A stretch of DNA of 63,322 bases, the filler included, from Lenisia limosa (taxonomy: Eukaryota > Protista > Breviatea): the NCBI GenBank assembly GCA_001655205.1. It is 8 parts of 8 records of this genome, joined end to end, with 100 filler letters (N's around TTAATTAATTAA, not from the genome) between each part and the next. Parts side by side here need not be neighbours in the genome. Positions count along the whole stretch, not along the records: positions 3,331 to 30,524 come from LPNZ01010688.1; 7 more parts are not named here. One strand, written 5' to 3'. The notes under the pieces are model-generated. The model was not told the DNA's origin and searched no databases. It saw only the letters and a list, made by a program, of their open reading frames with translations. Below are positions 9,301 through 26,782 of this stretch, piece by piece (the stretch's first letter is position 1; every line of letters starts with the position of its first letter). Position numbers and translations under genes: made by a program.

Positions 9301-11090
9301 ACGCAGTAATACGGAAGGAGGTAGAAGAAAGGCGAACACAACAGGGACGACACGAACGTGATGGTGAAGGCAGCCTGCATGATTAATGGAGGTTGGTGGG
9401 ACGAAATATGAGAGAGGAAATGTGAATGCAGAAACATCACTACAAACCACTCTTTCAAAGTAACGGGATATAAACATCACTACAGACCACTCTTTCAAAG
9501 TAACGGATATAAACATCACTACAGACCACTCTTTCAAAGTAATGGGATATAAAAAAAATTATGTTGTGATTCACCCTGTCATTAACAACCCTTGCCCCCG
9601 CAAACAACCAAGGAGAAGTATAGAATATGTAATATCAAAACTCATTCTAGACCCAACAAGCCTGGTATTAAATAAACAGGATGATTTACTCAAAAACAAA
9701 CACCACTTACACAGAGCAAAGGATGCCTCCTTGAGAAGGATATCATTGAGTGCCTCTTTGAAACAGCAGGAAGAAAAGGGGAAGAAGAAGGAGACCCTCT
9801 CGAGGCTGCACTTGCCCTCTATGCCATCAAGGAAGCCCTTAGAGGAAGTGGCAGCTCGGTTGCGCGGGCAAACATGGCAATTCCGCTCAACTCACATCGC
9901 AGTTCCTGTCTCTATTACTTCTTAGCTCTGGTTCTGCTCTGTTTCGTGAATCTTTGTGAGATCTTTGTTCTGCAATATAGCAATATAATTTATAATTACG
10001 AGAGAATAATCAGTGTTGGATTTTTTAAAATTCTGAAATTTCGGATGATTTTCTGCTCATGCGGCCGGAAATTTCAGTCACTCAAGTGGGGGTGACAACA
10101 AAATATCAGGTTTTCCTCTTTGGTGTTTCATGTTTTCTTCAATTATCACTGAACTATCTTCCTCAAATAATCTATAAACTTAAACATTGCCAGTTTGCCA
10201 ATTTGAATGGAATCCGTGTCAGTTTCCTTGAATTTGTGTTAAGTAGTTCCCATAAAACAAAAGACAAACATAAATATCAAAAGACTAAAAAAATATAACA
10301 CAAGACTATACCACACACAAAAAAAACCTATTGTCTATTGTCACCCTTCGAACTCCTTTCAAAAGTCCTCACTTATCTCGATTCTGGTTAATAATAACAA
10401 TTACCTTTGTGAATAAATCATCTCCCAGTGTTCCTAAAGCTAAATACGTTACTTGAGGGTCCGATGAAAGACTAATAGCCTCAAGGTGAACCCAATAGCT
10501 GCAAAATACGTTGAAATTGAAGGTGATTTCAGTGTACTTGTTTATCTTGCCATTTAACATGATACCAAACACAAAGTGTTAGTGATGTCAAGTTGTAAGT
10601 GATGTGAGTTTGCCAATGTGGATTTGACCTGACTGTTAACTCCTGGTTTCACTAACAAATTTGTGACACCTCATTAGACCAGCAATTATTTGAACGAAAA
10701 AGCTGAGAACTTTTCCTAAAAGAAAGAACTTTTATTCTTTGAGAATGCATTGTGGCAATTCAAATGGATTTGGAAAGGTGACCATTATGAAACCTGTAAA
10801 AAGAATCGGAAGTGTTCCCAAAAGCAACATTACTCCTGAAAAAGTCATTCATATCTTGAATTGCAGACAATGGACTTGTCAAGCTATGGTATTGCACCAG
10901 CCTACCAGCCACCCGACACACGGAAATGATTGCCGCACCCTTTTGCCTCTACAATGGAATGAAGAAAACAGCCAGTGTTAACCAACCCAGTGAAAATGGC
11001 GGAAGTCATTTTCAAGTCTTTTGTCCTTGAAGCAGTGCGTCTTTGAGGCAATTCTGGTAAAGGTAACAATCCACTTGCCCATGTCACCAT
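3330..11090 (-). CDS. Multi-exon coding region, product unresolved; possibly the N-terminal tail of the dynein gene across the scaffold gap
   Basis: About 20 open exon-like segments with acceptors/donors, e.g. ~5473-5565 VARILHLRYLASYYYPSTMMNLPRGLYHLK, ~8860-9080 GVSTLLAGPVSADLYPGTYDIHIK, ~10415-10500 YWVHLEAISLSSDPQVTYLALG. No AAA1 motif found. Separated from the dynein exons by the linker at 3276-3287. Confidence 0.45.
9431..9550. repeat. ~40-bp tandem repeat x3 (intronic)
   Basis: Unit AAACATCACTACAGACCACTCTTTCAAAGTAACGGGATAT repeated three times. Confidence 0.9.
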
Positions 11091-11422
11091 TAGGGGCTGA
11101 TATTGAGGGTAGTACTGAGAATCATGAAGATGGGGAAAGTAAGTTGTGAGTATTAGTGTATTGGGAGAGGAAAATGAAAGGTTAGTTGCAAAACAGGAGC
11201 TTGAAAGAGGAGGAGGGCGAGAAATTGGTGAAACTTGCCTTATTCTTGTTTTCCCAACCCTATCAGACTCAGAGCACCAATAAAATCATGTGACAGAATC
11301 CAAAGAAATAATGATAAAAAAATGTATTGAAACATGACAAGTCCAAGTCTTAATGGGCGCAAACGGCTGGAGGACCTGAAGTGTGAGAAGAGTTAACAAA
11401 GAAAAGAAACATAAAAGGAGGT

Positions 11423-11505
11423 GTGTTCAGTCAACTCTTTCTCGGCACTGTGATTTTTTCACTTGGAAACTCTAGTCCGTTTTAATGAGAGGGTCATCAC
11501 CACAA
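11423..11505 (-). ncRNA. Box C/D snoRNA, single-copy family E
   Basis: C box GTGATGA (11494-11500), D box CTGA (11427-11430) and terminal stem TGTG/CACA. The D guide CGAGAAAGAGTT is complementary (one G-U) to conserved SSU rRNA AGCUCUUUCUCG. Confidence 0.75.
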
Positions 11506-11630
11506 GCAAAACAAAGACATCTTGTAGTCCCAACTCACCATCATGAGAAGTTTGAAGAGAGTAGAGCGGACAGCCCTCAATCTAAAAAGTAAGAATAAGC
11601 TGTGAAAGAAAAGCGAAAAATGGGAAGAGT

Positions 11631-11709
11631 ATCTCAGAGGGAAGTCGAGCGAGTTATCATCACGGACTGATACAGATGTACTTTGGGAAGTAAGTTTTTC
11701 TTCACTGAT
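11631..11709 (-). ncRNA. Box C/D snoRNA family C, copy 1
   Basis: ATC/GAT terminal stem, variant C box GTGAAGA, C' GTGATGA and D CTGA. The D guide CGACTTCCCT is complementary to LSU rRNA AGGGAAGUCG. Confidence 0.75.
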
Positions 11710-11850
11710 GGAAAATGATGGGGCATTAGAATTTCATTCAACATACCTTAAAAAGATTGTTGCCACACTGAAGCCGAAGGACTCATAGGGGATCAGATCC
11801 TGAAAGGGTCAATATGGAAAGTAAAAGTTGAAAAGCAGCTACGAAAACGA

Positions 11851-11941
11851 AAAGCCTCATTTTCAGCCTGTTTTTTCAACATAACAGCAAGAGCGAGTAA
11901 CCCAAGCGTCAGCCGGTAATTCCAATGTGTTCATCGACAGA
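11851..11941 (-). ncRNA. Box C/D snoRNA family B, copy 1 (snR77/SNORD65-like)
   Basis: Variant C box TCGATGA, D' CTGA preceded by TGGAATTACCG (complementary to SSU CGGUAAUUCCA), and terminal D CTGA. Confidence 0.8.
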
Positions 11942-12084
11942 TAGTAATAATAAGTGCAAATATAATCTCTCTTCAACTCACCTTGAAGAAAGCCTTCACA
12001 GAAGATGACAGAACGAGAGATAAGGATGAGCTCTGGGGAAAGTAAGAAAGGTTTTGACTTGATTGTCAACAAAGAAACAATAAT

Positions 12085-12158
12085 ATCTCAGACAAGGTTG
12101 AATCAGCGTATGGTGTTGTCATCAAAGGATTCAGTGGAAAGAACGAATCATCATCGAT
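12085..12158 (-). ncRNA. Box C/D snoRNA family A, copy 1
   Basis: atcg-ATGATGA(C)...CTGA(D')...TTGATGA(C')...CTGA(D)-gat, with all four boxes and a terminal stem. Confidence 0.85.
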
Positions 12159-12293
12159 ACGGGGAGAAATGACACATTAGTACTATGATCTAACCTTCAA
12201 CCTTCATAAAATGCAGCCTCATTGCAGCGGTTCAGGACGAAAACTAAGAAGTGAAAAGAGGACATGAGGATAAACAAGAAAATGGCAGTAAAT

Positions 12294-12350
12294 ATCTCAG
12301 ACAAGGTTGAATCAGCGTATGGTGTTGTCATCAAAGGATTCAGTGGAAAG
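12294..12350 (-). ncRNA. Box C/D snoRNA family A, copy 2 (5' end lost in 10-N gap)
   Basis: Identical to copy 1 over the visible 57 nt. Confidence 0.75.
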
Positions 12351-12514
12351 NNNNNNNNNNAGAGCCAGGGAGAGTAGCATTGAAGGAGGTTATTGCTTAC
12401 CATGAAGAATGAAGGTGCTGAAGACAGGCGACAGGCAACTCTGATGGGCTTATTTGCGATTCCTATAAGATGAGAAAAGGGAAAGTAGGTTGAAGGATGT
12501 GTATGAAAGCAAAT

Positions 12515-12588
12515 ATCTCAGACAAGGTTGAATCAGCGTTTGGTGTTGTCATCAAAAAGTTCAGTGGAAAGAACGAATCATCATCGAT
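12515..12588 (-). ncRNA. Box C/D snoRNA family A, copy 3
   Basis: Same boxes, with substitutions mainly in the D'-C' loop. Confidence 0.85.
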
Positions 12589-12721
12589 ATAGGAGGATAG
12601 GTTTCATCTTGCTCAAATTTGCATACCTTGATAGTGCGTATACTGAGCAGACGTGACAAGAAAGATATGAATCTAAGGCGTAAAAAGGGACGTGACGATA
12701 AAAAAGAAAAATCAAGTAAAT

Positions 12722-12795
12722 ATCTCAGACAAGGTTGAATCAGCGTATGGTGTTGTCATCAAAAGATTCAGTGGAAAGAACGAATCATCATCGAT
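12722..12795 (-). ncRNA. Box C/D snoRNA family A, copy 4
   Basis: Same boxes, lying in the intron between exons ~12628-12672 and ~12830-12878. Confidence 0.85.
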
Positions 12796-12926
12796 ATGAT
12801 AAGGTTGTAAATTGAAGTAGAAGCTCACCATGATAAGGAAGTAACCTGCTTATGGGACTGCATTTGCTTCAAATGTCTAAACAAGTTAGTAAAGAAAAAC
12901 TAAGTGTATGGGTCAAAAAGTGAATG

Positions 12927-13017
12927 AAAAGCCTCACTTTCAGCCTGTTTTTTCAACATAACAGCAAGAGCGAGTAACCCAAGCGTCAGCCGGTAATTCC
13001 AATGTGTTCATCGACAG
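12927..13017 (-). ncRNA. Box C/D snoRNA family B, copy 2
   Basis: Near-identical to 11851-11941. Confidence 0.8.
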
Positions 13018-13149
13018 ATAAGAAAATGTGTTCCATTCAAACATACCAAAGACGGGTCCCGATGGCACGTGAGTTCATAACGACTAACAAGCGGTAAACT
13101 GAAAACGTAAGTATGGGTTTGGGGATGCCGAGCATGCAGGAACAAATGA

Positions 13150-13228
13150 ATCTCAGAGGGAAGTCGAGCGAGTTATCATCACGGACTAATACAGATGTAC
13201 TTTGGGAAGTAAAATTTTCTTCACTGAT
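13150..13228 (-). ncRNA. Box C/D snoRNA family C, copy 2
   Basis: Near-identical to 11631-11709. Confidence 0.75.
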
Positions 13229-13360
13229 GGAAATTACGAAGGGCAAGCGCAACAACTAACCTTAGAAGTTGTCAATCGAACTAGGCGCGAGAGTGATGGT
13301 GTTGTTGAGCTCTAAAGAAATGAGGGAGGTTTGAGTGATAAAAATCACAGGAAAGAAGTG

Positions 13361-13436
13361 AAAAGCCTCATTTTCAGCCTGTTTTTTCAACATAACAGCA
13401 AGAGCGAGTAACCCAAGCGNNNNNNNNNNTGACAGA
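13361..13436 (-). ncRNA. Box C/D snoRNA family B, copy 3 (interrupted by 10-N gap)
   Basis: D-box half is identical to the other B copies, and GACAG resumes after the gap. Confidence 0.7.
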
Positions 13437-13560
13437 CTCAAGCAAGTGAATACTCACCGTTCAGCGTAGAACTACAACGACTCCCTTCATTGTCATGTCA
13501 CTCGGGGAATCTGAATATGTGAGGAGCGATCAGAAGAATTTTGTTGATCAAGTAAAAAGA

Positions 13561-13639
13561 ATCTCAGAGGGAAGTCGAGCGAGTTATCATCACGGACTAA
13601 TACAGATGTACTTTGGGAAGTAAGTTTTTCTTCACTGAT
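13561..13639 (-). ncRNA. Box C/D snoRNA family C, copy 3
   Basis: Near-identical to the other C copies. Confidence 0.75.
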
Positions 13640-13778
13640 TCAAAATGACAAATTAGAAGCAGCTTCAGCTAACCGTAAAGACACCATAGCTAGGTCATCA
13701 GAATAACCAAAGAATTCTCGTGAAGGGTCTAAAGAGTCAATTCCGGTAAATCGGGGATAGGAAGGGGAAATGGTGTAT

Positions 13779-13869
13779 AAAAAGCCTCATTTTCAGCCTG
13801 TTTTTTCAACATAACAGCAAGAGCGAGTAACCCAAGCGTCAGCCGGTAATTCCAATGTGTTCATCGACA
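13779..13869 (-). ncRNA. Box C/D snoRNA family B, copy 4
   Basis: Near-identical to the other B copies. Confidence 0.8.
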
Positions 13870-14597
13870 AGTGCGGCAGAAATCAGGTTTCTCCACTGAC
13901 CTTTGGGGGACGAGCATGTGTTACTTGCCTTAGTGTCATGGAGTGAAAAGGAGAACCTAGGAGAGTCAGAGTTGAAAAGGAGAACCGGGAGGATCAGCTG
14001 ATCTCAACTGATTCAAGCAGCAATCCTTTTGTGGATTGATACTGATTGATGCCATGATAGTTGAAACCTCATATAATGAAGTGCACACACCCGAAAATTT
14101 AGAGGGGGAAACCGTATTCTGGGCTCCATCTGCTGACATTGCGAGCTCTGAAGCGTGAGAAAAGTAAAAAAGGGAAGTGGTGGGTGACCAAAAAAGAAAT
14201 GCTTCTTTGAAGCCAATTTCCCCCCCAAGAGTGATAGATGAGCGCAATTTTATTCAAAAGGATGATTCAGATCAGCAACTGAAAAAGAAACCCACAGAAA
14301 AGCTGCATAACTCACCTTAAAGAGCGAGATGAAAGAGCTGGACCATCAAAGACTTTTATGAAGATCATCATTTCAAAAGGGGAAAATAGAAAAAAATTAT
14401 CCTGCAAAAAGGGAAAGTTCGGTTCATTTCACATGTCATTACGATATTAGAATTGATGCATTTCTTTTACTTGGGTTAACCCCTTTTCCCTCTCTCCTCT
14501 TGCTTGTAATATTACTTACTTAAATGTAGTATTTCATATCTAAAATAAAAAATCAGATAAGCGCGTTAGCTACTCTGTTTTTGTGTGATCATGAATC

Positions 14598-17500
14598 ATG
14601 ATAGACTGTTTGTTGAGGCGTAATATCTCACAGTTTAGGCCACCAAAGAACCATAAAAATACTCTTTTGGTATCAAGCAGACAGGTAATTGTTTTCGTAC
14701 TTGACCGCTCAGAAAGGAAACCCACTGTTGAACTTCCTTCGTGTGAAGTGGCAGTTTTCTGACACAATCGAAGCAGATTTCCATGTCGCCAATAGCACCC
14801 TTGCGATCGCCTATCTCACGTGAGCCTTGTGAAAGTTTATTTGGATGACTAGAATTCTGAGCACTGGACAAATAAACATAACACTGGTCATATACTCATA
14901 AGTAATGGTAATAGAATGCATGTCATCTCATGCAGTCCTTTCGTCTTGTCGAATGCTTCGACANNNNNNNNNNNNNNNNNNNNNNNNNNNNNNNNNNNNN
15001 NNNNNNNNNNNNNNNNNNNNNNNNNNNNNNNNNNNNNNNNNNNNNNNNNNNNNNNNNNNNNNNNNNNNNNNNNNNNNNNNNNNNNNNNNNNNNNNNNNNN
15101 NNNNNNNNNNNNNNNNNNNNNNNNNNNNNNNNNNNNNNNNNNNNNNNATCCCTTTTCATTGAATTATAGGATGAGGGCAAGCTCAGACAAGAGGTGCTAC
15201 TGGATCTGAACTTGATTCAAATGAACATCAAATGCCAGTTTTGGCCATTCGTATCGTAGGCTTGGCTGTGAACATCAAATAATCCCAAATTAATAATGGA
15301 ATCGTTTTTTTTTGTTATAAAAATTATTAATCTTTCCTCTTTAGGATGAGTAATTGTGGAGACTTCATCTCAACCAGTTGTGAGTATGATGGTTTAGACT
15401 GGGGACCTTATCTGAAGAAGGCGTCATCACCAAGGGAGAAGGTGAGTATTATGTGTTTTTCAATCTTTGTATCAGCTTGTTTGGCAGCTTACTCCTTTTG
15501 AAGCAAGTTAATTTGATTTAAAGTATTCTCTGTCCTCAATATTTCATGTTGATCCTTTAGGTTTATGAATTTTTTAATGAAATTCGGGGTATCAACCGTG
15601 AAGACACCAGGAACCTGATGAGGGAGTTCAAAGTGAGAGGTTATCCACTAATTTCAATTTAGTTAAGCTACTAGATTTGATTTTCTGCTGTTTGCTTCTT
15701 ACCCCCCTCCCCGCAGACAGTAGCCCGAGTCATAGTAGCGACCAAAGATGAGCTTGAACTGGTCCAGGGGATTGGGCCAAAAAAAGCCTCCTACCTATAC
15801 ACGTATTTCCGAATGTCGAAGCAGTCGAGCGATGAGGCATTCATGAAAAGGTCGCGAGAGGAACTCAAGGCTATTCTGGACTATGTTGGAGGAGGCACAG
15901 CAAAAGATGAACATGTTTTTTGGAATATACCATAGCTAATTAATTTGACAATCTCTATATTGACAATACATGTACATAATATATTGACAATCTTGTCAAT
16001 CTCATGGTCTCAGGCGCTTGCCCCAGCCAATCCTGATTCCCGTATGCCTTTGTCAGAACAGGTTTCAGGCCTACCGCTAACTCATCTTGACTACATCAAA
16101 TCAAGAATGAAGAAGAGGGAAAAGGTGGGTTCTATTGACAGTTTTGGTGGTGTTCCATTTGTTAATGTTCTTCTGACAAGTTCAGGACGAGGCTATTGCG
16201 ATTCTCAAGTCTATCTACCTGAATGTCCCCCTGAAAGTTGGTAATTAGTAGGATTATTCAGTATTGTTTTTGAGTTTCTTCGATTTCTCACACCATAGGA
16301 AGCTTCACCCGTTCAAGCTGGGAAGAGAATGAAGAGAGTTGATGACTCGCCATACTATATACCATTCAGCCGAGAAAGTGACACTGACTCGGATGTTGAA
16401 CAAAAGGTTCGAATCAGAGTCACCTTTTCATCCCCTTAGGTTTTATTGTCATCAGTTTTCCTTCACAGTACTGTTCACTCATCTGTAAAATGGTGAATAG
16501 TTTTCATTCCGAATTGCAATATTTTTTAAGATCATCTAACACGATAGACCCCAACTTGCTTAACATAGCAGGCTCCAAGACCCCAGGCCGACCCTTATGC
16601 AACATTTGAGCCTCCTGAAGTGTTCCAAGACGAATATGCTCCAATAAACGTTGAGAACTTGTTCTATTTCCCTTTTAAGGCTGAAATGCCACGTGAAGAA
16701 ACAGCAAGGTTTGGGTATTCCTGAATTGTTTTGAAGATATTGGTTAGTTCTGACTCTAATTTATATTACTTAGTCGATCTTTGCTTGCTCACTTGTCACC
16801 AAAGTAGATTTCGGTTTATTTCAGCTGATGAGCTTTCTAAAGCCAATAAATCGCTGGTCTCTCAAATGGAAGACCCGGTACTCAAAAACCTCCCGAAAGG
16901 TTTGTCTATATCTGTAATTGATAGGAGTGATAGGAGTGATTGTGGACATAGGAGTGATGAGTGATAGGGTGGTAGGGTGGTAGTCACTTCTTTGTGATGA
17001 TACATTTCGTTGCAGTAAATAGAAACATCTTACCTCCATCACAGGTGCAATTCTTCCTTCAGAGCAAGAGGGCGATGGTGAGTCGACTGTTAACAAGGCG
17101 CTATCAAGAAAGAACAGACTTTTGTGAGCCCTGGTGCTCATATAATATGACTTCTCAGAAGTTGTATTTCGTTCAATATTATTATTGTAATGTTGTAGAA
17201 AGGCAATGGAGAGGGACAAAGACCTGGAAGCGGTTGAGGTGTGCATAAGAATCAGAAGCTTCAATTCCTAGTTTCTGATTGTCTCAATCTTTCATCGATA
17301 TGCAGTTTTATTCCAGTCATTCCCATCACCTTACTCCTCCATAGGTTCCTGAGGGCAGTAACTTGAGTTTGCTGGAGGAACATCGAAAAAGCGTATTGAG
17401 GGATCGGAACGTCGAGAACTCCCCCGAAGCCAAGGCTGTTAGGGATAAGGTATGGATGGAGTATCAGAGTGTATTAACAAATTATACTGCATTCCACTCT

Positions 17501-19792: not shown

Positions 19793-22700
19793 TCACATTC
19801 TTGTCGGTGTGGCAGATGGTCGTCTTGGTGAGGGGGACACAAACGGTGACGCGAATCGCATAGATGTTGACCGCAAAATACTGTTAGGTGTTGAGCCTAA
19901 TACTCCTGTGGGGGTTAATGATGGTTAGACTCCTCCTTCATAACCGGTCCATTCACCTCCAATGTATAGCAATGATAAATAAAAAATAAGGTTGTATCCA
20001 GCCGAAGCCGTCCACACCATTACGCTTATATAAGATAATGGATTATAGTATCATATTTATTCACCCAATCATTTGCCTTAAAACTCTGTATACACAGTGT
20101 TCTGCTTGCCTCAATACCCAATCATTTCGCAGAGTCCTGTATACCAGAGGATGCTCTACTTGGGGTGTTCCTCTTGAGAAGGGCGGATGCAGCTGGTGAG
20201 AGCCCTATTGCAGGTTAATCCCATCCGGGCAAGTTTTATCATATCATATCATGAAGTAGGGTGAACTGCCTCTTCCCACCACATCCTTTGAGCACCCCCA
20301 ACCCCCACCTATTTTACCGTCAGCACTCCTATCCCGTGCTTTCATGCGCTGTTTATTGCGCTTTTTAGCGATGTTTTCCTGGGCCAATCGATGGGCTACT
20401 ACCTCTCGTCTGGAGAGTAAATGGGAATTTAGTACCCATCCCCCACCCCAAAAAAACAAAAAAAAAACAATTGAGATGCACACGAGTAGGGGCTGTACAA
20501 AGCTGCGTGAATGGTTGTGGCAACAAACAAGCACAATAATATTATATCACATTTCCACCTTTCAATATAATATTATAATCCAAAGCATCAACGGTGAAAT
20601 CTCGCTTGAATAATGATATTAAATGCTTGTACTTTATACTTTTCTAAGATCTGCGCCTTCCAGCCACCCCGCACCCTGTTTGTTGTGGGACCTTAAAAGC
20701 GTTCTTCGGTGGCGGGCCTGCATTGACTCGGATTGGCGTCGCAGCGACCTCACCCCATGTCATACCGGGGGCAAAACTGGCATCCTGGGGAATGGGGTCA
20801 ATGAAATGGTAGGTTAATGAGACATCAACTCCGAAAGCGCAGAAGTAGATACCAGTCTTATGCTGCTCAAAGTATGTCCAAACTCAACATTTGTTCCTGA
20901 AAATTTAGGGCTTCACTTCGGTAAATAGATCCCTCGAAATTTATCGAACCGGTATTTTTCGAACCAGCCCCCTGGAAATCCCAACGCACCTCAAGTTCAC
21001 TCCGAGACGGGGTGTTGAGAACATCATCCGGGTTGACCACCAGCTCTCCCTTGATTTCTTGGGGTACAGCTGGGTGAGAGAGGGGGGGGGGGTAAAACGA
21101 AAGGAGACTTGATGNNNNNNNNNNNNNNNNNNNNNNNNNNNNNNNNNNNNNNNNNNNNNNNNNNNNNNNNNNNNNNNNNNNNNNNNNNNNNNNNNNATGG
21201 GATGTTGTCGTTAACATCTGATCAACTGATTCAATGTCTTGATAAAGAGAGGGAGTAGACCGGAGAAATGGAGTAAGTAGAGTTGGATCTAGACGAAGCT
21301 GTCCACACTATTATGAATAAGCAAATATTATAACACATAATGTAATGTTGTGTTAAGTAGGAGTAATTTGATTTATAGTTGCAATGAATCTCCTCTCACT
21401 CAGCTGTTTGTGGTAAACTTCAAGATCCACCCTTGTGTTCTCCCTGTTAATAACTTTAGGAGCACGCTGACTCTAAAGAGAACGTCAGAACTCGACCAGA
21501 AGATCTTTTTGAAACAAGACACCCAAGAACTGTATCTGTTACACACCCCACTCACAACATCCAGCTTATCTGCCTCGAGAGAGAGCACACCGTCCGGGTT
21601 GAACATCAAATTACTCCGTGCAGCGTAATCCCATCCCAGGTAACTTGCTGCGCAGTCAGTTGTAATCTGAGATCAATTTTATGTTGAAAAGAAAGCAACT
21701 AATCTAACTTTCTACTTCACAATCATCTTTTACTATTAACTCAGGGAAGATAATTCGTTCAGTTGTTATTGTCTTTGAATGTGCTTCCCCCCTCACAGCC
21801 CGGCTTGTTCACTTTTGCTGCATTAGTTCCGGTCAGAGCAAGCATGTTCTTATGGTGCTCCAGATACTTCAGTCTAAAGGGTCATAAATAGATACACAAA
21901 TATTGATTGAAAATTGAAAGACTATAATAAGTAACACGAATTTTACCCTCTCCCACTCTCTATCTCTGAAGTGCTTCCGCAGCTCTCCACCTTCGCGGAC
22001 TTTCTTCTCCGCCAGCATGACGCCTGAGAACGCAGCGTTGTCCTCCGATGTGTACTTACGCATGAAGGAGTCGAGCCTCATATCCTTGGTGTCAACTGAA
22101 CGCAGCGGCCGAAGATCGGTGCCCTGCGAAGTCAAATATCGTCTTTTCTCAGCGGAAGTTTGAGGGACCACAGTACAGAACATAAGTGAGGTGTTCTTCA
22201 GTTCAAAGTGAAACCTGATGAACTGCAACAATAATCTTGGCAATACCCCCCACCCACAGCATCCTCTTCATCTGCACCGTCGTCTTCTTTCGGTTCCAAT
22301 GTTCTATCGTCCACCTCCAGGGACACTATTGAAGACTTGCTATCCTGCGGATTCTGATAGGGTTAATAAAAAGGGTATCTAATTTTTACTTAATATATAA
22401 CAAGAAAAAGCTACAGAATGATCAGAGGCTGATACTGTTCTCATCATTGTTTCATACACGCAATCATTGACTCTCTATCCCCATACATGTCCATTCAACG
22501 CCGCAAGATCCGGGAAGTAGTCCCTTTCAATGATCTTCTCTACCGCAGCCGTAAAGACATCCTCGTCGAGGACCTTTGAGCACGTCTTTTCTCGTATCTC
22601 TATTGCCACTTTCTTCTGGGCTTGTAGGGCTGCCAAGGCTCCAGCCCCGGGACGCTGGAGGGTTAAACAAGAAAAATAGAAATATTCAACTTGGTTTTGA

Positions 22701-23125
22701 TGTTGGACTGAACTGGCGAAAGAAAAGCCAACTTTGAATCAGTGGTGAAGATTTTCAAAAGATGTATCATAAAATAATATTCTTATAAGAAGCCAGAGAA
22801 AGGAGGAGTACCTTGTAGGCCATTATCTCTTTATGAAGCTCCTTTTCTCGGTCCTCAATTCTGTCAATGTGGACCTCCCGATACCGGGCGGGCTGTGACT
22901 AAAAGATCAAATCAGAGAGATCCAGAAAAGCGCTTCAATGCTCTCAACAGGTTCAAAACAAGCTAATAAAACAGAGCCCATTTGCACTTTGATCGAGGAA
23001 TTGAGAGGTTATGAATGATAGCCTTGAGTAATTTTTCACCTCATCATCCAACGAACCTTTGGTGCTTCAATAATTGCTCCATTTTGATCAGGGGTTGAAG
23101 CGACAATCGCAGATTTCTTCTCCAT
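19793..23125 (-). CDS. ESS2: Splicing factor ESS-2/DGCR14 homolog (multi-exon)
   Basis: KVLDEDVFTAAVEKIIERDYFPDL, RLDSFMRKYTSEDNAAF, WDYAARSNLMFNPDG, VINRENTR, MTWGEVAATPIR and LSPAASALL motifs in the correct order. The last exon is tentative. Confidence 0.9.
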
Positions 23126-23316
23126 TGTGACAGTGCTTTCAAGACAACGTGCTATATGTTTTGTGACCACTTTATTTGATATCTACACAGAATAATACAT
23201 TAAAATCGAGCCAAGAGGGACAAAAAGGGCAAAAAAGAAAACTAAAAGGCAATCATATAATGGGGACAGGTAACAGTGAGTTATACAGTGTTTTCTAGGC
23301 AAGCTAAGCACGCCTG

Positions 23317-26300
23317 ATGACACTTCTCCCCTTAAAACATTATATATTACAAAGATGTACTTTATTCCAAGGGGCCCTCCGATTTAGCCCTCTTTCCTTT
23401 TCCGGACCTCGATCACTATTGTCATCATTGAGCAGACTGCCTTTTGGAAGAGTTTGGGGGAGTCTTCGCAGTTATTCCACGCTATTTTATATTATTATAG
23501 AATAATTGTTAAATTGGACCAAAATTGGTCAGAAATTAATCTGTGCAAGATTCTGTGGGTTCATTGTTTTCATGTACAACAAATTTGAATGTGACCAAAA
23601 TTTGACATTGAAACTGACAAAGGACAATAGCATATTGCCAAGAATCTTGAAAGCATTCATCTTCTGGCTTTCCTGTGATGTTTTAGAATATATGTTATTT
23701 AAATTTACTGGGTTAAGAGTGATAGTGAGTCCTAATTTTGCAGGTTACTGAAGGGTTACGAGAAGAGTTTTCATCAATTGTTGGACCATCCGGTGTTCTC
23801 ACAGGTAACACTGGAACATGTGACCAAATCTAGAAATGAAACTATCTTTCTCATCCACTAAGATGTGCTGAAACGCCCAAAATCTTTATTACATGAATAG
23901 ACAATTTATTTCCAGGGGATGACATAAGCGGCTTTGATGAAGATTGGCTGGCTAAATACAAAGGAAGCCCACAATGTGTAGTTTTGCCATCAACAACAGA
24001 CCAAGTGAGCTGTCATCTTGTTTTTTTTACGTTTTAGGTATCTGACATATTGGCAACATGTTATAATCACAAGTAGGTCTTTTGAAATAATACCGTGAAC
24101 GGGATTGTCCTTCATTTGTTCGCTACATGTCAAAACTTGAATGTGTTTGGAAATTGGAGTGCCAGTTTGAAATATTCACCTCCCTAGCCTCGCGGTTGTT
24201 CCCCAGGGAGGTAACACCGGACTTGTCGGGGGATCCGTACCGGTCTTCGATGAAATAGTTCTGAGCACCAGAAGGCTCAATAGAATCATAAACGTTGACC
24301 CAACTACGGGAGCTGTCACCGCTCAAGTGAGAGGATTGTAATTACTTTAACATCAAAGGTCACCAATTCCTACTCATATCGGTGGCTTCATAGTAAATAA
24401 AAGTCAGTTTGAATCATGAGATAACCGTGACACGTTCTATCTGATTGTCAATCTGAAAAAGTTGACAACCATTAGGCTGGAGTGATTTTGGGTGCTCTTG
24501 ACGACTATTTAGCTGATTATGACATGACAATTCCAATTGACCTTGGTAAAGGGGTCATGTAATGGGAAGTTGTTTTGGAATCTAACAAATGTACAGGGGC
24601 GAAAAACTCTTGCACTATTGGCGGTAACATTTCCACCAATGCAGGGGGGATCCGACTCCTTCGCTACGGTTCGCTTCATGGAAGCACCTTGGGACTTGAA
24701 GTGGTATGTAACGGCAATTCATAAAATGGTAGATAACTTCATGGTAAAACATTGATACCCCCCTTTAGCTGTGATTTATTTATTTGTATTTTGTGTTTTC
24801 AAAATAATCTCCAAGGTACTTGCTGATGGAACTGTTATTTCGAATCTCAACACCAATCGCAAGGATAACACCGGGTGGGTAACACTGCTGAGATTCCTAA
24901 TAATCACATTGACACTGATCGGTCTTTGTATGTAACCTCCCAGCTATGACCTGAAGCATCTCTTTATTGGCTCAGAAGGGACTCTTGGAGTGGTTACAGC
25001 ATGTAGCATTCTAGCTCCGCCTAAACCATCGGTAATTTGTTCTTTCTTATTTGTCTGTTCAAGTGGCATTGTTGGCTGTCAACTCTTACAGTGATATTTT
25101 GGCCTTATTCACCAAAGCAAAGAAACAACTTGGTGAAATTCTCTCAGGTGCTCTCTCCAATTTATAATGATCTCGATTAATCACCCAGCTTTTGAATTCT
25201 TGGATGGACCATCTTTTGATCTTGTAACGCAACACATGGAAAATACCAGCAATCCCTTGGAACAAAGTTACCCGTTTTTTGCTGTTGTGGAAACCTCAGG
25301 AATGCACATGGACCATGATATTGAGGTGAGAACTCGGGACTCTGAAATGTCATTTCAAGGGTTAAAAAATGTCTTGTATAATCTCTCGTGTTTTGCACAA
25401 GTTGTAATTGTGAGTCATCTCTTGTAGAAAATGGCAGCCTTCCTTGAAGATGCCATGACAGAAGGGCCACTGGTTGATGGGGTCATTGCTGAATCATCCA
25501 GTCAAGCTGAGAATATCTGGGCTCTTAGGGAGCAGGTAAGTATCCCACATACAAATGCATTTGGAAATCGCTTATATGGCTTCCCCTCCCCCCAAAAGTC
25601 CTTTTAGAAGACTTAATTTATTGATTACAGATGTGCTGTTACTATATACTATATCATATATAGCTATGATTATGTTAAGGTGGCCGAGGCAGCCCAGCGA
25701 CATGGCCGAGCTTTCAAATGTGAGCCTGATGTAAAATCAATTATGAAAGAACAAATGAAATTATGGTTTTCAAACAATAATAACTTCAAAGATGACGTGT
25801 CACTTCCGACATCCGACTTTTACGCCCTCGTGAACCAGACAAAGAAGATGGTTACGGATCACAAGATCGATGCGATGACAATTGGCTACGGACATGTTGG
25901 TGACGGTATGCTTTTGCCTTTCTTGCTCTAATTATTCTGAGTTGTCCAATTATTTTTGTCCTTTTNNNNNNNNNNNNNNNNNNNNNNNNNNNNNNNNNNN
26001 NNNNNNNNNNNNNNNNNNNNNNNNNNNNNNNNNNNNNNNNNNNNNNNNNNNNNNNNNNNNNNNNNNNNNNNNNNNNNNNNNNNNNNNNNNNCCTATGACT
26101 CTCCAATTGAAGAGGTATGCAAATTCAGATATGATGTTTTACCCTTGAAGCTACAACCTTGTTGTATTTCTCATCAACAAAATTGGCAATATCAAGTTTA
26201 ATGGGTATAGCAGGATCCCCCCCCCCCCCNNNNNNNNNNNNNNNNNNNNNNNNNNNNNNNNNNNNNCCGAAGCCGTCCACACTATCACGCTTATACACTG

Positions 26301-26782
26301 CTTACTCCCCCCAGCTACTTGATGAATCCATCTACCAGTTCATTGAGGACCATAAGGGCAGTGTCTCGGCTGAACACGGTAGACTTGTCTTAGAACATAT
26401 GATATGATATGCATGATACGTATATATATGGACAGATAATACTATTATTGTTAATCTCCCCCTCTCAATACCTTTTTTGTTGCCCACATCACTCTTTAAC
26501 TTTGAAGGAGTTGGTGTCATGAAGCCCCGATATATTCACCACTCAAAATCAGAGGTAAGTAGGAATACTCTTGTTCAAAAAGAAAATCCCTTCTATCCTC
26601 CCCTTATCTTCTCAACTAAGCTATTAGGAGGAGATTGACCTCATGAAATCAATAAAAGATCTCTTAGATCCCAAGGTGAGCCTATCCATTCACTTATATT
26701 GTGGAACCAGGACCTACCTACCTTCAATCTCCGATTAACATTGTAGGGCATTCTCAACCCATACAAAGTACTTCCCCTTTGA
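23317..26782 (+). CDS. D2HGDH: D-2-hydroxyglutarate dehydrogenase (FAD-linked oxidase), probable mitochondrial presequence; start approximate
   Basis: [97 protein letters not shown] and [16 protein letters not shown]. An upstream Arg/Ser/Leu-rich exon lies at ~23370-23480. Confidence 0.95.

What the first reader, a model, noticed from the sequence alone, without database searches (positions are those of the whole stretch)
11330..14372. Non-coding snoRNA host gene (GAS5/UHG-like) in a protist: 12 intronic box C/D snoRNAs between tiny exons
Seen: a minus-strand chain of 35-62 nt exons with a ~215-bp period. Each intron holds one 73-90 nt element with C and D boxes, placed about 25-40 nt after the donor and about 50-65 nt before the acceptor. 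Exon 13458-13510 is closed in all three frames, and adjacent exons do not join into an ORF. Known: vertebrate and Drosophila host genes such as GAS5 and UHG have exactly this design, and C/D snoRNAs sit at a constrained distance from the 3' splice site. Inferred: this is a dedicated snoRNA carrier transcript, an architecture mostly described in animals and plants, and invisible to ORF-based annotation.
Basis: partly seen in the sequence, partly recalled or inferred. Interest (0 to 1): 0.88.

Follow-up and report, generated by a model that had tools for sequence, protein, structure and literature searches.

The report
Non-coding host gene carrying 13 snoRNAs
This is a real, spliced, polyadenylated RNA gene with no protein-coding capacity; 13 of its 14 introns each carry one small guide RNA for ribosomal RNA methylation, a design already known from animals and fungi.

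Summary
One 779-nt contig from a poly(A) RNA library joins the predicted short minus-strand exons through GT..AG introns.

A gap-free independent assembly of the locus (L122) resolves both N gaps. They hide only the 5' parts of two snoRNA copies: 18 nt and 35 nt, not 10. L122 also shows that the window collapsed one 227-nt unit, a second D copy plus a 52-nt exon.

With that unit, a 15-exon, 14-intron model sums to exactly 779 nt. Thirteen introns hold one box C/D element each, from four families (A x4, B x3, C x4, D x2).

- **Conservation:** copies are 97-100% identical inside sharp 76-86-nt blocks, flanks about 55-65%, and exons are unrelated.
- **Position:** elements lie 31-43 nt after the donor and 45-55 nt before the acceptor.
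- **Coding:** the longest ORF in the spliced RNA is 47 aa, below the shuffle median.
- **Targets:** four guides match conserved rRNA sites. Two use the same guides as snR77/snoR77Y and snR78. Family C resembles snR41.

It is a UHG/GAS5-type host gene, a new member of a known kind. The organism was not identified, so "protist" is untested.

The parts
14091..14149 (-). Exon 1 as seen in RNA. The 5' end is open: the contig starts at 14149, 2 nt before an acceptor-like CAG.
   Evidence: RNA contig record positions 1-61; model
13957..14090 (-). Intron 1, 134 nt, GT..AG, with no recognisable snoRNA
   Evidence: Joint (cut +2); no C/D arrangement; fold z-score -0.48
13901..13956 (-). Exon 2
13784..13869 (-). 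snoRNA A copy 1 (86 nt) in intron 2 (13729-13900)
   Evidence: the D' guide pairs with 18S GCGGUAAUUCCAG
13674..13728 (-). Exon 3
13561..13639 (-). snoRNA B copy 1 (79 nt) in intron 3 (13511-13673)
   Evidence: the D guide pairs with LSU AGGGAAGUCGG
13458..13510 (-). Exon 4, closed in all three frames
13365..13429 (-). snoRNA A copy 2 in intron 4 (13312-13457). Its 5' part is hidden by gap 13420-13429, which is really 35 nt.
   Evidence: L122 has 35 nt there; complete 86-nt copy in L122; X1 contig link
13261..13311 (-). Exon 5
13150..13228 (-). snoRNA B copy 2 in intron 5 (13099-13260)
13047..13098 (-). Exon 6
12931..13016 (-). snoRNA A copy 3 in intron 6 (12877-13046). It has the single A-to-G difference, at the first base of the putative AUGA D box.
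12829..12876 (-). Exon 7
12721..12796 (-). snoRNA C copy 1 (76 nt, snR41-like) in intron 7 (12673-12828)
12627..12672 (-). Exon 8
12514..12589 (-). snoRNA C copy 2 in intron 8 (12463-12626)
12401..12462 (-). Exon 9
12293..12360 (-). snoRNA C copy 3 in intron 9 (12244-12400). Its 5' part is hidden by gap 12351-12360, which is really 18 nt.
   Evidence: L122 shows the 18 nt, minus-strand TATCGATGATGATTCGTT; X1 link
12195..12243 (-). Exon 10
12084..12159 (-). snoRNA C copy 4 in intron 10 (12033-12194)
11982..12032 (-). Exon 11
11854..11939 (-). snoRNA A copy 4 in intron 11 (11800-11981)
11747..11799 (-). Exon 12
11631..11709 (-). snoRNA B copy 3 in intron 12 (11582-11746)
11539..11581 (-). Exon 13
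11422..11504 (-). snoRNA D (83 nt). In the window this is a collapse of two identical copies. The true locus has intron 13 (D copy 1), a 52-nt exon 14, and intron 14 (D copy 2): L122 12224-11835.
   Evidence: The extra exon makes the model sum to 779 nt and explains the odd GT..TC joint.
11327..11375 (-). Last exon (exon 15 of the true locus). The RNA contig ends at 11327.
   Evidence: Contig length arithmetic and the depth bin 11223-11363

Best explanation
The region is a non-protein-coding snoRNA host gene on the minus strand.

Shown:
- A poly(A) transcript is spliced at 14 GT..AG introns.
- The spliced product of 15 tiny exons has no meaningful ORF.
- Thirteen introns each contain one box C/D element from four families (A x4, B x3, C x4, D x2).
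- Those elements are the only conserved parts of the repeated units.

Inferred:
- After splicing, each lariat is debranched. Exonucleases trim it down to the block protected by the C/D core proteins, giving 76-86-nt snoRNAs.
- The fixed placement of each element (31-43 nt after the donor, 45-55 nt before the acceptor, about 40 nt before a branch-point-like yTnAy motif) is the geometry that lets snoRNP assembly couple to splicing.
- The snoRNAs then guide ribose methylation of rRNA at these predicted sites:
  - A: 18S U in GGUAAUUCC, the site of yeast Um578 / human Um627.
  - B: LSU A in AAGGGAAGUCGG.
  - C: probably the 18S helix-27 G, the site of yeast Gm1126.
  - D: LSU U in GACUCUAG, the site of yeast Um2421, plus 18S C in AGCUCUUUC.
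- Multiple copies per family raise the dose from one promoter.
- The exon RNA is most likely a by-product.
For: **Splicing.** One 779-nt contig from a poly(A) library shows 13 joints in the window, all GT..AG on the minus strand. RNA depth is zero on both flanks while DNA depth is normal there.

**Independent assembly.** The gap-free assembly L122 adds one unit. The 15-exon model then sums to exactly 779 nt.

**No coding capacity.** The longest ATG ORF is 47 aa, against a shuffle median of 52. There are stops in every frame.

**Conserved blocks only.** Cores are 0.97-1.00 identical and 30-nt flanks 0.53-0.67. Block edges are sharp, and the few differences fall mainly in D'-C' spacers. Exons are unrelated to each other.

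**Placement.** The distances to donor and acceptor are constrained.

**rRNA targets.** Guides were tested on 11 foreign eukaryotic rDNAs. The number of 500 shuffles reaching the observed score was 3 for A D', 8 for B D, 4 for D D' and 3 for D D.

**Shared guides with known families.** A has the same guide as Rfam snoR77Y and Afu_300, and D the same as snR78. The 3' half of C matches the snR41 consensus. Site equivalences come from PMC8817022 (Um578/Um627/Um580; Um2421/Um3904) and PMC4344503 (snR41-Gm1126).

**Contrast with a neighbour.** The nine introns of the neighbouring Es2-like coding gene, which are of similar length, hold no such elements.
Against: - No small-RNA data exist, so accumulation of 76-86-nt RNAs and their exact ends are not shown.
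- No family reaches its Rfam gathering score. The best is 26.9 bits against 50.
- The guides of family C are not significant on foreign rDNA.
- The D box of family A is ambiguous: either CUGA without a terminal stem, or A/GUGA with a 3-bp stem.
- RNA support is a single assembled contig from one run. It is not raw reads and has no strand information.
- The 5' end and promoter are undefined.
- The organism's own rRNA was not available.
Confidence: 0.88

Rival explanations
1. The snoRNAs are released from the primary transcript by endonucleases, independently of splicing, as in plant or yeast polycistronic clusters. Splicing of the spacers would then be incidental.
For: Polycistronic, splicing-independent processing is common outside animals (PMC11028025, PMC3273799). 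No data here show the processing route.
Against: Every spacer has consensus donor, branch-point-like and acceptor signals. All are used in the RNA contig. There is exactly one element per intron, at a tightly fixed distance from both splice sites. That geometry is expected for splicing-coupled assembly and is not needed for endonucleolytic release.
Confidence: 0.08
2. The spliced exon RNA is itself functional, either as a micropeptide mRNA or as a regulatory lncRNA like GAS5. The snoRNAs would be passengers.
For: The spliced RNA is polyadenylated. Its assembler depth is higher than that of the neighbouring Es2-like mRNA (34.6 against 12-18), although depth is a poor measure. Short ORFs of 47 and 40 aa exist.
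Against: The ORFs are shorter than in shuffled sequence. The exons of duplicated units have diverged beyond recognition, while the intronic blocks are 97-100% identical. So selection acts on the introns.
Confidence: 0.05
3. The repeated units are an assembly artefact, that is, duplicated or mis-joined repeats.
For: There are two N gaps inside repeats. The DNA contigs break at every repeat. The window itself is mis-assembled, with one unit collapsed.
Against: A second assembler gives the same order, without gaps and with one more unit. Each unit has unique exons and flanks. An RNA contig from a different sample runs through all unique exons in the same order, including the exon missing from the window. 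The error is a collapse, not an expansion.
Confidence: 0.01

Closest known systems
Drosophila U snoRNA host genes (dUHG/Uhg family, e.g. Uhg4)
   Same: A non-coding, spliced host gene with many short exons, one C/D snoRNA per intron, and several near-identical copies of the same snoRNA in successive introns. Uhg4 is described as a lncRNA hosting seven snoRNAs (10.1101/2022.05.26.493587). The tandem-isoform design is from my own knowledge of the dUHG literature.
   Different: There is no sequence relationship. Here there are 13 copies of only four families. The organism is unknown, and the branch-point motif lies very close (6-10 nt) to the acceptor.
Neurospora crassa box C/D snoRNA clusters I-V (UHG-like hosts)
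   Same: Non-coding hosts with only short ORFs (159-267 bp), one snoRNA per intron, canonical splice sites verified by RT-PCR, and comparable snoRNA-to-splice-site distances (PMC2780460).
   Different: The Neurospora clusters hold different snoRNAs rather than amplified copies, and fewer per host. Alternative splicing is reported there and was not assessable here.
Mammalian GAS5 / UHG (SNHG1)
   Same: The functional product lies in the introns and the exons are poorly constrained. The transcript is polyadenylated and has no long ORF.
   Different: The 5'TOP start and NMD sensitivity that characterise the mammalian genes could not be tested. Mammalian hosts carry different snoRNAs, not tandem copies.
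Rfam snoRNA families snoR77Y/Afu_300 (yeast snR77 site), snR78 and snR41
   Same: Family A has the guide UUGGAAUUACCG-N-CUGA of snoR77Y/Afu_300. The D' guide of family D, ACUAGAGUUU, is that of snR78. Family C shares GACAACACCAU...UUCA-CCUUGU with snR41, in the same register before the D box.
   Different: All scores are far below the gathering thresholds (15-27 bits against 40-52). The second guides differ. The D' box of family D is CCAA, not CUGA. The guide of family C has two mismatches to the usual 18S sequence.

Membership tests
Box C/D snoRNA (class) | C box (RUGAUGA) near the 5' end and D box (CUGA) near the 3' end | tested here: met
   C boxes: A cGAUGA, B GUGAAGA, C AUGAUGA, D GUGAUGA. 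The D box is CUGA in B, C and D. In A it is either CUGA or A/GUGA, which is ambiguous.
Box C/D snoRNA (class) | Short terminal stem joining the 5' and 3' ends | tested here: met
   C: UAUC/GAUA, 4-5 bp, also found by the fold. D: UGUG/CACA. B: AUC/GAU. A: only GUC/GGC, and only if the D box is AUGA.
Box C/D snoRNA (class) | A guide of 10 bp or more complementary to rRNA, ending next to D or D', so that the nucleotide paired five positions upstream of the box is a plausible methylation site | tested here: met
   On 11 foreign rDNAs, 3-8 of 500 shuffles reached the observed score for A D', B D, D D' and D D. The guides of family C and the second guides of A and B were not significant. The organism's own rRNA was not available.
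Box C/D snoRNA (class) | Accumulates as a stable 60-100-nt RNA bound by fibrillarin, Nop56, Nop58 and Snu13 | not testable with these tools
   No small-RNA run was found. Only one poly(A) run holds the locus.
Rfam snR41 / SNORD33 / Afu_300 / snR78 / snoR77Y | Covariance-model score at or above the family's gathering threshold | tested here: not met
   No match at gathering thresholds. Best scores against thresholds: snR41 26.9 vs 50, SNORD33 26.7 vs 44, Afu_300 22.6 vs 40, snR78 21.6 vs 48, snoR77Y 15.3 vs 52.
Non-coding snoRNA host gene (UHG/GAS5/SNHG type) | Spliced, polyadenylated transcript whose introns carry the snoRNAs, one per intron | tested here: met
   Contig from a poly(A) library with all joints GT..AG. 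13 of 14 introns hold exactly one element.
Non-coding snoRNA host gene (UHG/GAS5/SNHG type) | No significant ORF in the spliced RNA | tested here: met
   The longest ATG ORF is 47 aa in 779 nt, against a shuffle median of 52 and a 95th percentile of 106.
Non-coding snoRNA host gene (UHG/GAS5/SNHG type) | Exons evolve freely while the intronic snoRNAs are conserved | tested here: met
   Among paralogous units, cores are 0.97-1.00 identical and flanks 0.53-0.67, and exons show no similarity above shuffles. Comparison across species was not possible.
Non-coding snoRNA host gene (UHG/GAS5/SNHG type) | 5'-terminal oligopyrimidine start and NMD-sensitive, short-lived spliced RNA (vertebrate members) | not testable with these tools
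   The 5' end is not defined, because the contig starts at 14149 next to an acceptor-like site. There are no decay data.

The most novel reading that the evidence does not exclude
If the organism lies outside animals and fungi, this would be an RNA-verified UHG-type host in another eukaryotic supergroup: non-coding exons, one C/D snoRNA per intron, and fixed distances to the splice sites. That would argue that splicing-coupled release of intronic snoRNAs from dedicated carrier transcripts is ancestral to eukaryotes or has evolved repeatedly, rather than being an opisthokont trait.
Probability: 0.3. Interest if true: 0.55.

Novelty: new member of a known kind. Interest (0 to 1): 0.4.

Why it matters
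This is a clean example, supported by RNA data, of a gene whose only selected products lie in its introns. ORF-based annotation misses it. One metagenome gene caller even placed a spurious 280-aa "gene" over its introns.

snoRNA annotation in fungi and protists is acknowledged to be poor (PMC11028025, PMC12309372). Loci like this one give four snoRNA families, five predicted methylation sites, and a template for finding more hosts in the same genome (short exons, introns of about 165 nt, and a C/D block 45-55 nt before the acceptor).

Its evolutionary weight depends on where the organism sits in the eukaryotic tree, and I could not establish that.

Tried and rejected
- **Rfam at gathering thresholds:** nothing found.
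- **Further RNA runs:** only X1 and X2 hold the locus.
no RNA cover, no C/D arrangement, and no stable fold.
- **snoRNA in intron 1:** none found.
- **Strict C/D pattern scan of the whole piece:** the pattern was too strict. It missed family C and gave one unconvincing 55-nt hit at 16336-16390.
- **snoRNAs in the Es2-like gene's introns:** none.
- **First shuffle test:** timed out and was redone vectorised.
- **Organism identification:**
  - An Es2 exon searched against 1.84 billion representative proteins gave only five weak fragments. The best was E = 1e-4, and one named hit was from cassava.
  - The ENA accession is not in the literature library.
  - Joined multi-exon proteins could not be submitted because they have no reference.
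- **Organism's own rRNA:** I did not lay reads on foreign rDNA to recover it. The tool filters human-like conserved sequence, and both read-laying runs were needed elsewhere.
- **Protein-coding reading:** rejected on ORF statistics and on the frame-incompatible repeat periods of 207, 209 and 221 nt.
Full report
**What is there**

On the minus strand, the region reads as a chain of short segments separated by intervals that start with GT and end with a pyrimidine tract plus AG. Repeat finding gave three families of near-identical blocks. Family A has four copies, C has four and B has three. A fourth element, D, sits near 11422-11504.

Each block carries C-box and D-box motifs in the order C-D'-C'-D.

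**Assembly gaps**

These were tested first, as asked. DNA contigs of run X1 link the unique flank at 13430 to 30 nt identical to the 5' part of another A copy. They link the flank at 12361 to the 5' part of another C copy.

An exact-protein look-up of a nearby ORF then found a second, gap-free assembly of the same locus: ENA ERZ3820729, NODE_181, 38.9 kb, locus L122. It is 100% identical to the window in most unique stretches and at least 99.7% in the rest.
- Gap 12351-12360 is 18 nt in L122, the missing 5' end of C copy 3.
- Gap 13420-13429 is 35 nt, the missing 5' end of A copy 2.

So the sequence is continuous across both gaps. Only their lengths were underestimated. The RNA also joins the exons on either side of each gap.

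L122 may derive from the same reads as the window. It is therefore an independent assembler, not independent data.

**RNA evidence**

Run X2 is a poly(A) "metatranscriptomic" library from a different sample of the same study. It holds one 779-nt contig that lies on the region in 14 pieces, with 13 joints. Twelve joints read GT..AG on the minus strand. One, 11538 to 11378, read GT..TC.

RNA depth is zero on both flanks (10800-11222 and 14184-15000) while DNA depth is normal there. The contig is therefore not DNA carry-over.

**A collapsed unit explains the odd joint**

L122 has 227 nt that the window lacks: a second, 100% identical D copy and a 52-nt exon between the two D-bearing introns. The window merged the two D copies.

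With this exon, the model has 15 exons of 43-62 nt and 14 introns of 134-182 nt, all GT..AG. It sums to exactly 779 nt, the length of the RNA contig. The stray "AG" at the odd joint is the end of the missing exon.

The depth in the bin 11223-11363 places the contig's 3' end at 11327.

**Coding potential**

The spliced RNA has stops in all frames. The longest ATG ORF is 47 aa, and shuffled sequences have a median of 52. Exon 13458-13510 is closed in all three frames.

The repeat periods of 207, 209 and 221 nt are not all multiples of three. A 280-aa "gene" placed over the C copies by the ENA gene caller has stops in the standard code. It is spurious.

**What is conserved**

Alignment of the introns of each family shows blocks of 86 nt (A), 79 nt (B), 76 nt (C) and 83 nt (D) with sharp edges.
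- Mean pairwise identity is 0.97-1.00 inside the blocks and 0.53-0.67 in the 30 nt on either side.
- The few differences inside the blocks fall mainly in the D'-C' spacer, with two just after the C box in B and one in C's 3' region. The remaining one is at the first base of A's putative D box.
- The exons of different units show no similarity above shuffles.

Selection, or conversion, therefore acts on snoRNA-sized intronic blocks and not on exons. This also rules out an artefactual duplication.

**Geometry**

The blocks start 31-43 nt after the donor and end 45-55 nt before the acceptor. A yTnAy branch-point-like motif lies 6-10 nt before each AG.

The neighbouring Es2-like coding gene has nine RNA-verified introns of 83-330 nt with the same motif. 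None of them has a C/D element. The one-per-intron arrangement is therefore specific to this gene.

**Predicted targets**

The organism's own rRNA was not available. I fetched 120 eukaryotic rDNA loci from metagenomes using the ITS1 primer region and used the 11 that span 18S to 28S.

| Guide | Predicted target | Shuffles reaching the observed score (of 500) |
|---|---|---|
| A, D' guide | 18S GCGGUAAUUCCAG | 3 |
| B, D guide | LSU AGGGAAGUCGG | 8 |
| D, D' guide | LSU GACUCUAGUC | 4 |
| D, D guide | 18S AGCUCUUUCUUG | 3 |

The other four candidate guides are not significant.

Permissive Rfam alignments show that A carries the guide of snoR77Y and Afu_300, and that D carries the guide of snR78. 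By the comparative table in PMC8817022:
- The A site is the conserved one: yeast Um578, human Um627, Arabidopsis Um580, Dictyostelium Um571.
- The D site is yeast Um2421, human Um3904.

I equate the 18S C site with human Cm1272 (SNORD66, PMC9941101) by counting from memory of the human sequence. That equivalence is an inference.

**Family C**

The 3' half of family C matches the snR41 consensus, including a non-guide stretch GACAACACCAU. Its D guide sits in the same register as that of snR41, which guides yeast Gm1126 (PMC4344503). It has two mismatches to the common GCAAGGCUGAAAC.

One of the two mismatched positions varies between C and U among the fetched rDNAs. The guide therefore predicts a U in this organism.

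No family reaches an Rfam gathering score.

**Mechanism**

Shown: the transcript is spliced, is found in a poly(A) library and has no ORF. It carries one conserved C/D block per intron, in fixed positions, and four guides match rRNA.

Inferred from established knowledge of intronic snoRNAs: release by debranching and exonucleolytic trimming, assembly coupled to splicing, methylation at the named sites, and the exon RNA as a by-product.

**Context**

An ERCC1/Rad10-like gene lies head to head on the plus strand from about 14600. The host gene's promoter must therefore lie within about 14150-14590.

The RNA contig starts at 14149, two bases before a good acceptor with a CTCAC motif. This suggests an unseen upstream exon. 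The 5' end stays open.

**Comparison and novelty**

Non-coding hosts with one snoRNA per intron are known in animals (UHG, GAS5, Drosophila Uhg genes). They are also known in Neurospora crassa, where five clusters are called UHG-like (PMC2780460). This locus works the same way and adds tandem amplification of four families.

It is a new member of a known kind. The organism could not be identified:
- Run and organism names are coded.
- An Es2 exon found no close relative.
- Joined proteins could not be submitted.

The claim "in a protist" is untested, and the evolutionary interest depends on it.

Noticed in passing
window 11378-11538 vs L122 11835-12224: The window assembly collapsed two identical D snoRNA copies and lost 227 nt, including a 52-nt exon. 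The gap-free ENA assembly and the RNA contig length both show the longer form.
   Followed up: yes
L122 12930-13772 (window about 12244-13086), minus strand: The public gene caller placed a 280-residue 'gene' across the introns holding the C copies. The standard code has stops there, so the call is probably a reading that ignores TGA, and the boxes (UGAUGA, CUGA) are full of TGA. It is a spurious protein in public collections.
   Followed up: partly
window 20675-23198, minus strand: An Es2/DGCR14-like nuclear protein gene (Pfam PF09751), expressed in X2. It has nine GT..AG introns of 83-330 nt and exons of 73-170 nt, so the genome is intron-dense with short exons. The branch-point-like TRAC motif lies 5-10 nt before the AG.
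   Followed up: partly
window about 14598-15932, plus strand: An ERCC1/Rad10-like gene lies head to head with the host gene. It has exons with QKGNPLLNF and FKYHAKHRQYIKARL, and an HhH exon at 15681-15932. It is silent in X2. A possible 28-nt intron near 14686-14713 would join two of its exons in frame, but this is unverified.
   Followed up: partly
window 25137-26407, plus strand: Exons of an FAD-linked oxidase (Pfam FAD-oxidase_C, like D-lactate or D-2-hydroxyglutarate dehydrogenase), with no RNA cover in X2.
   Followed up: no
window 26116-26312: DNA contig depth jumps to about 6188, against about 33 elsewhere, next to an assembly gap. This points to a very high-copy short repeat around 26267-26297.
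   Followed up: no
window 3331-30524, many places: Most N gaps border runs of G or C (read as PPPP or GGGG in translations). The gaps seem to be caused by homopolymer tracts, and L122 reads through them.
   Followed up: no
family C copies, e.g. window 12084-12159: Between C' and the D guide, family C has ACCAUAC, which is complementary to the 18S stretch GUAUGGU just upstream of the predicted target. The same region is conserved in the snR41 consensus. It may be an accessory pairing element.
   Followed up: partly
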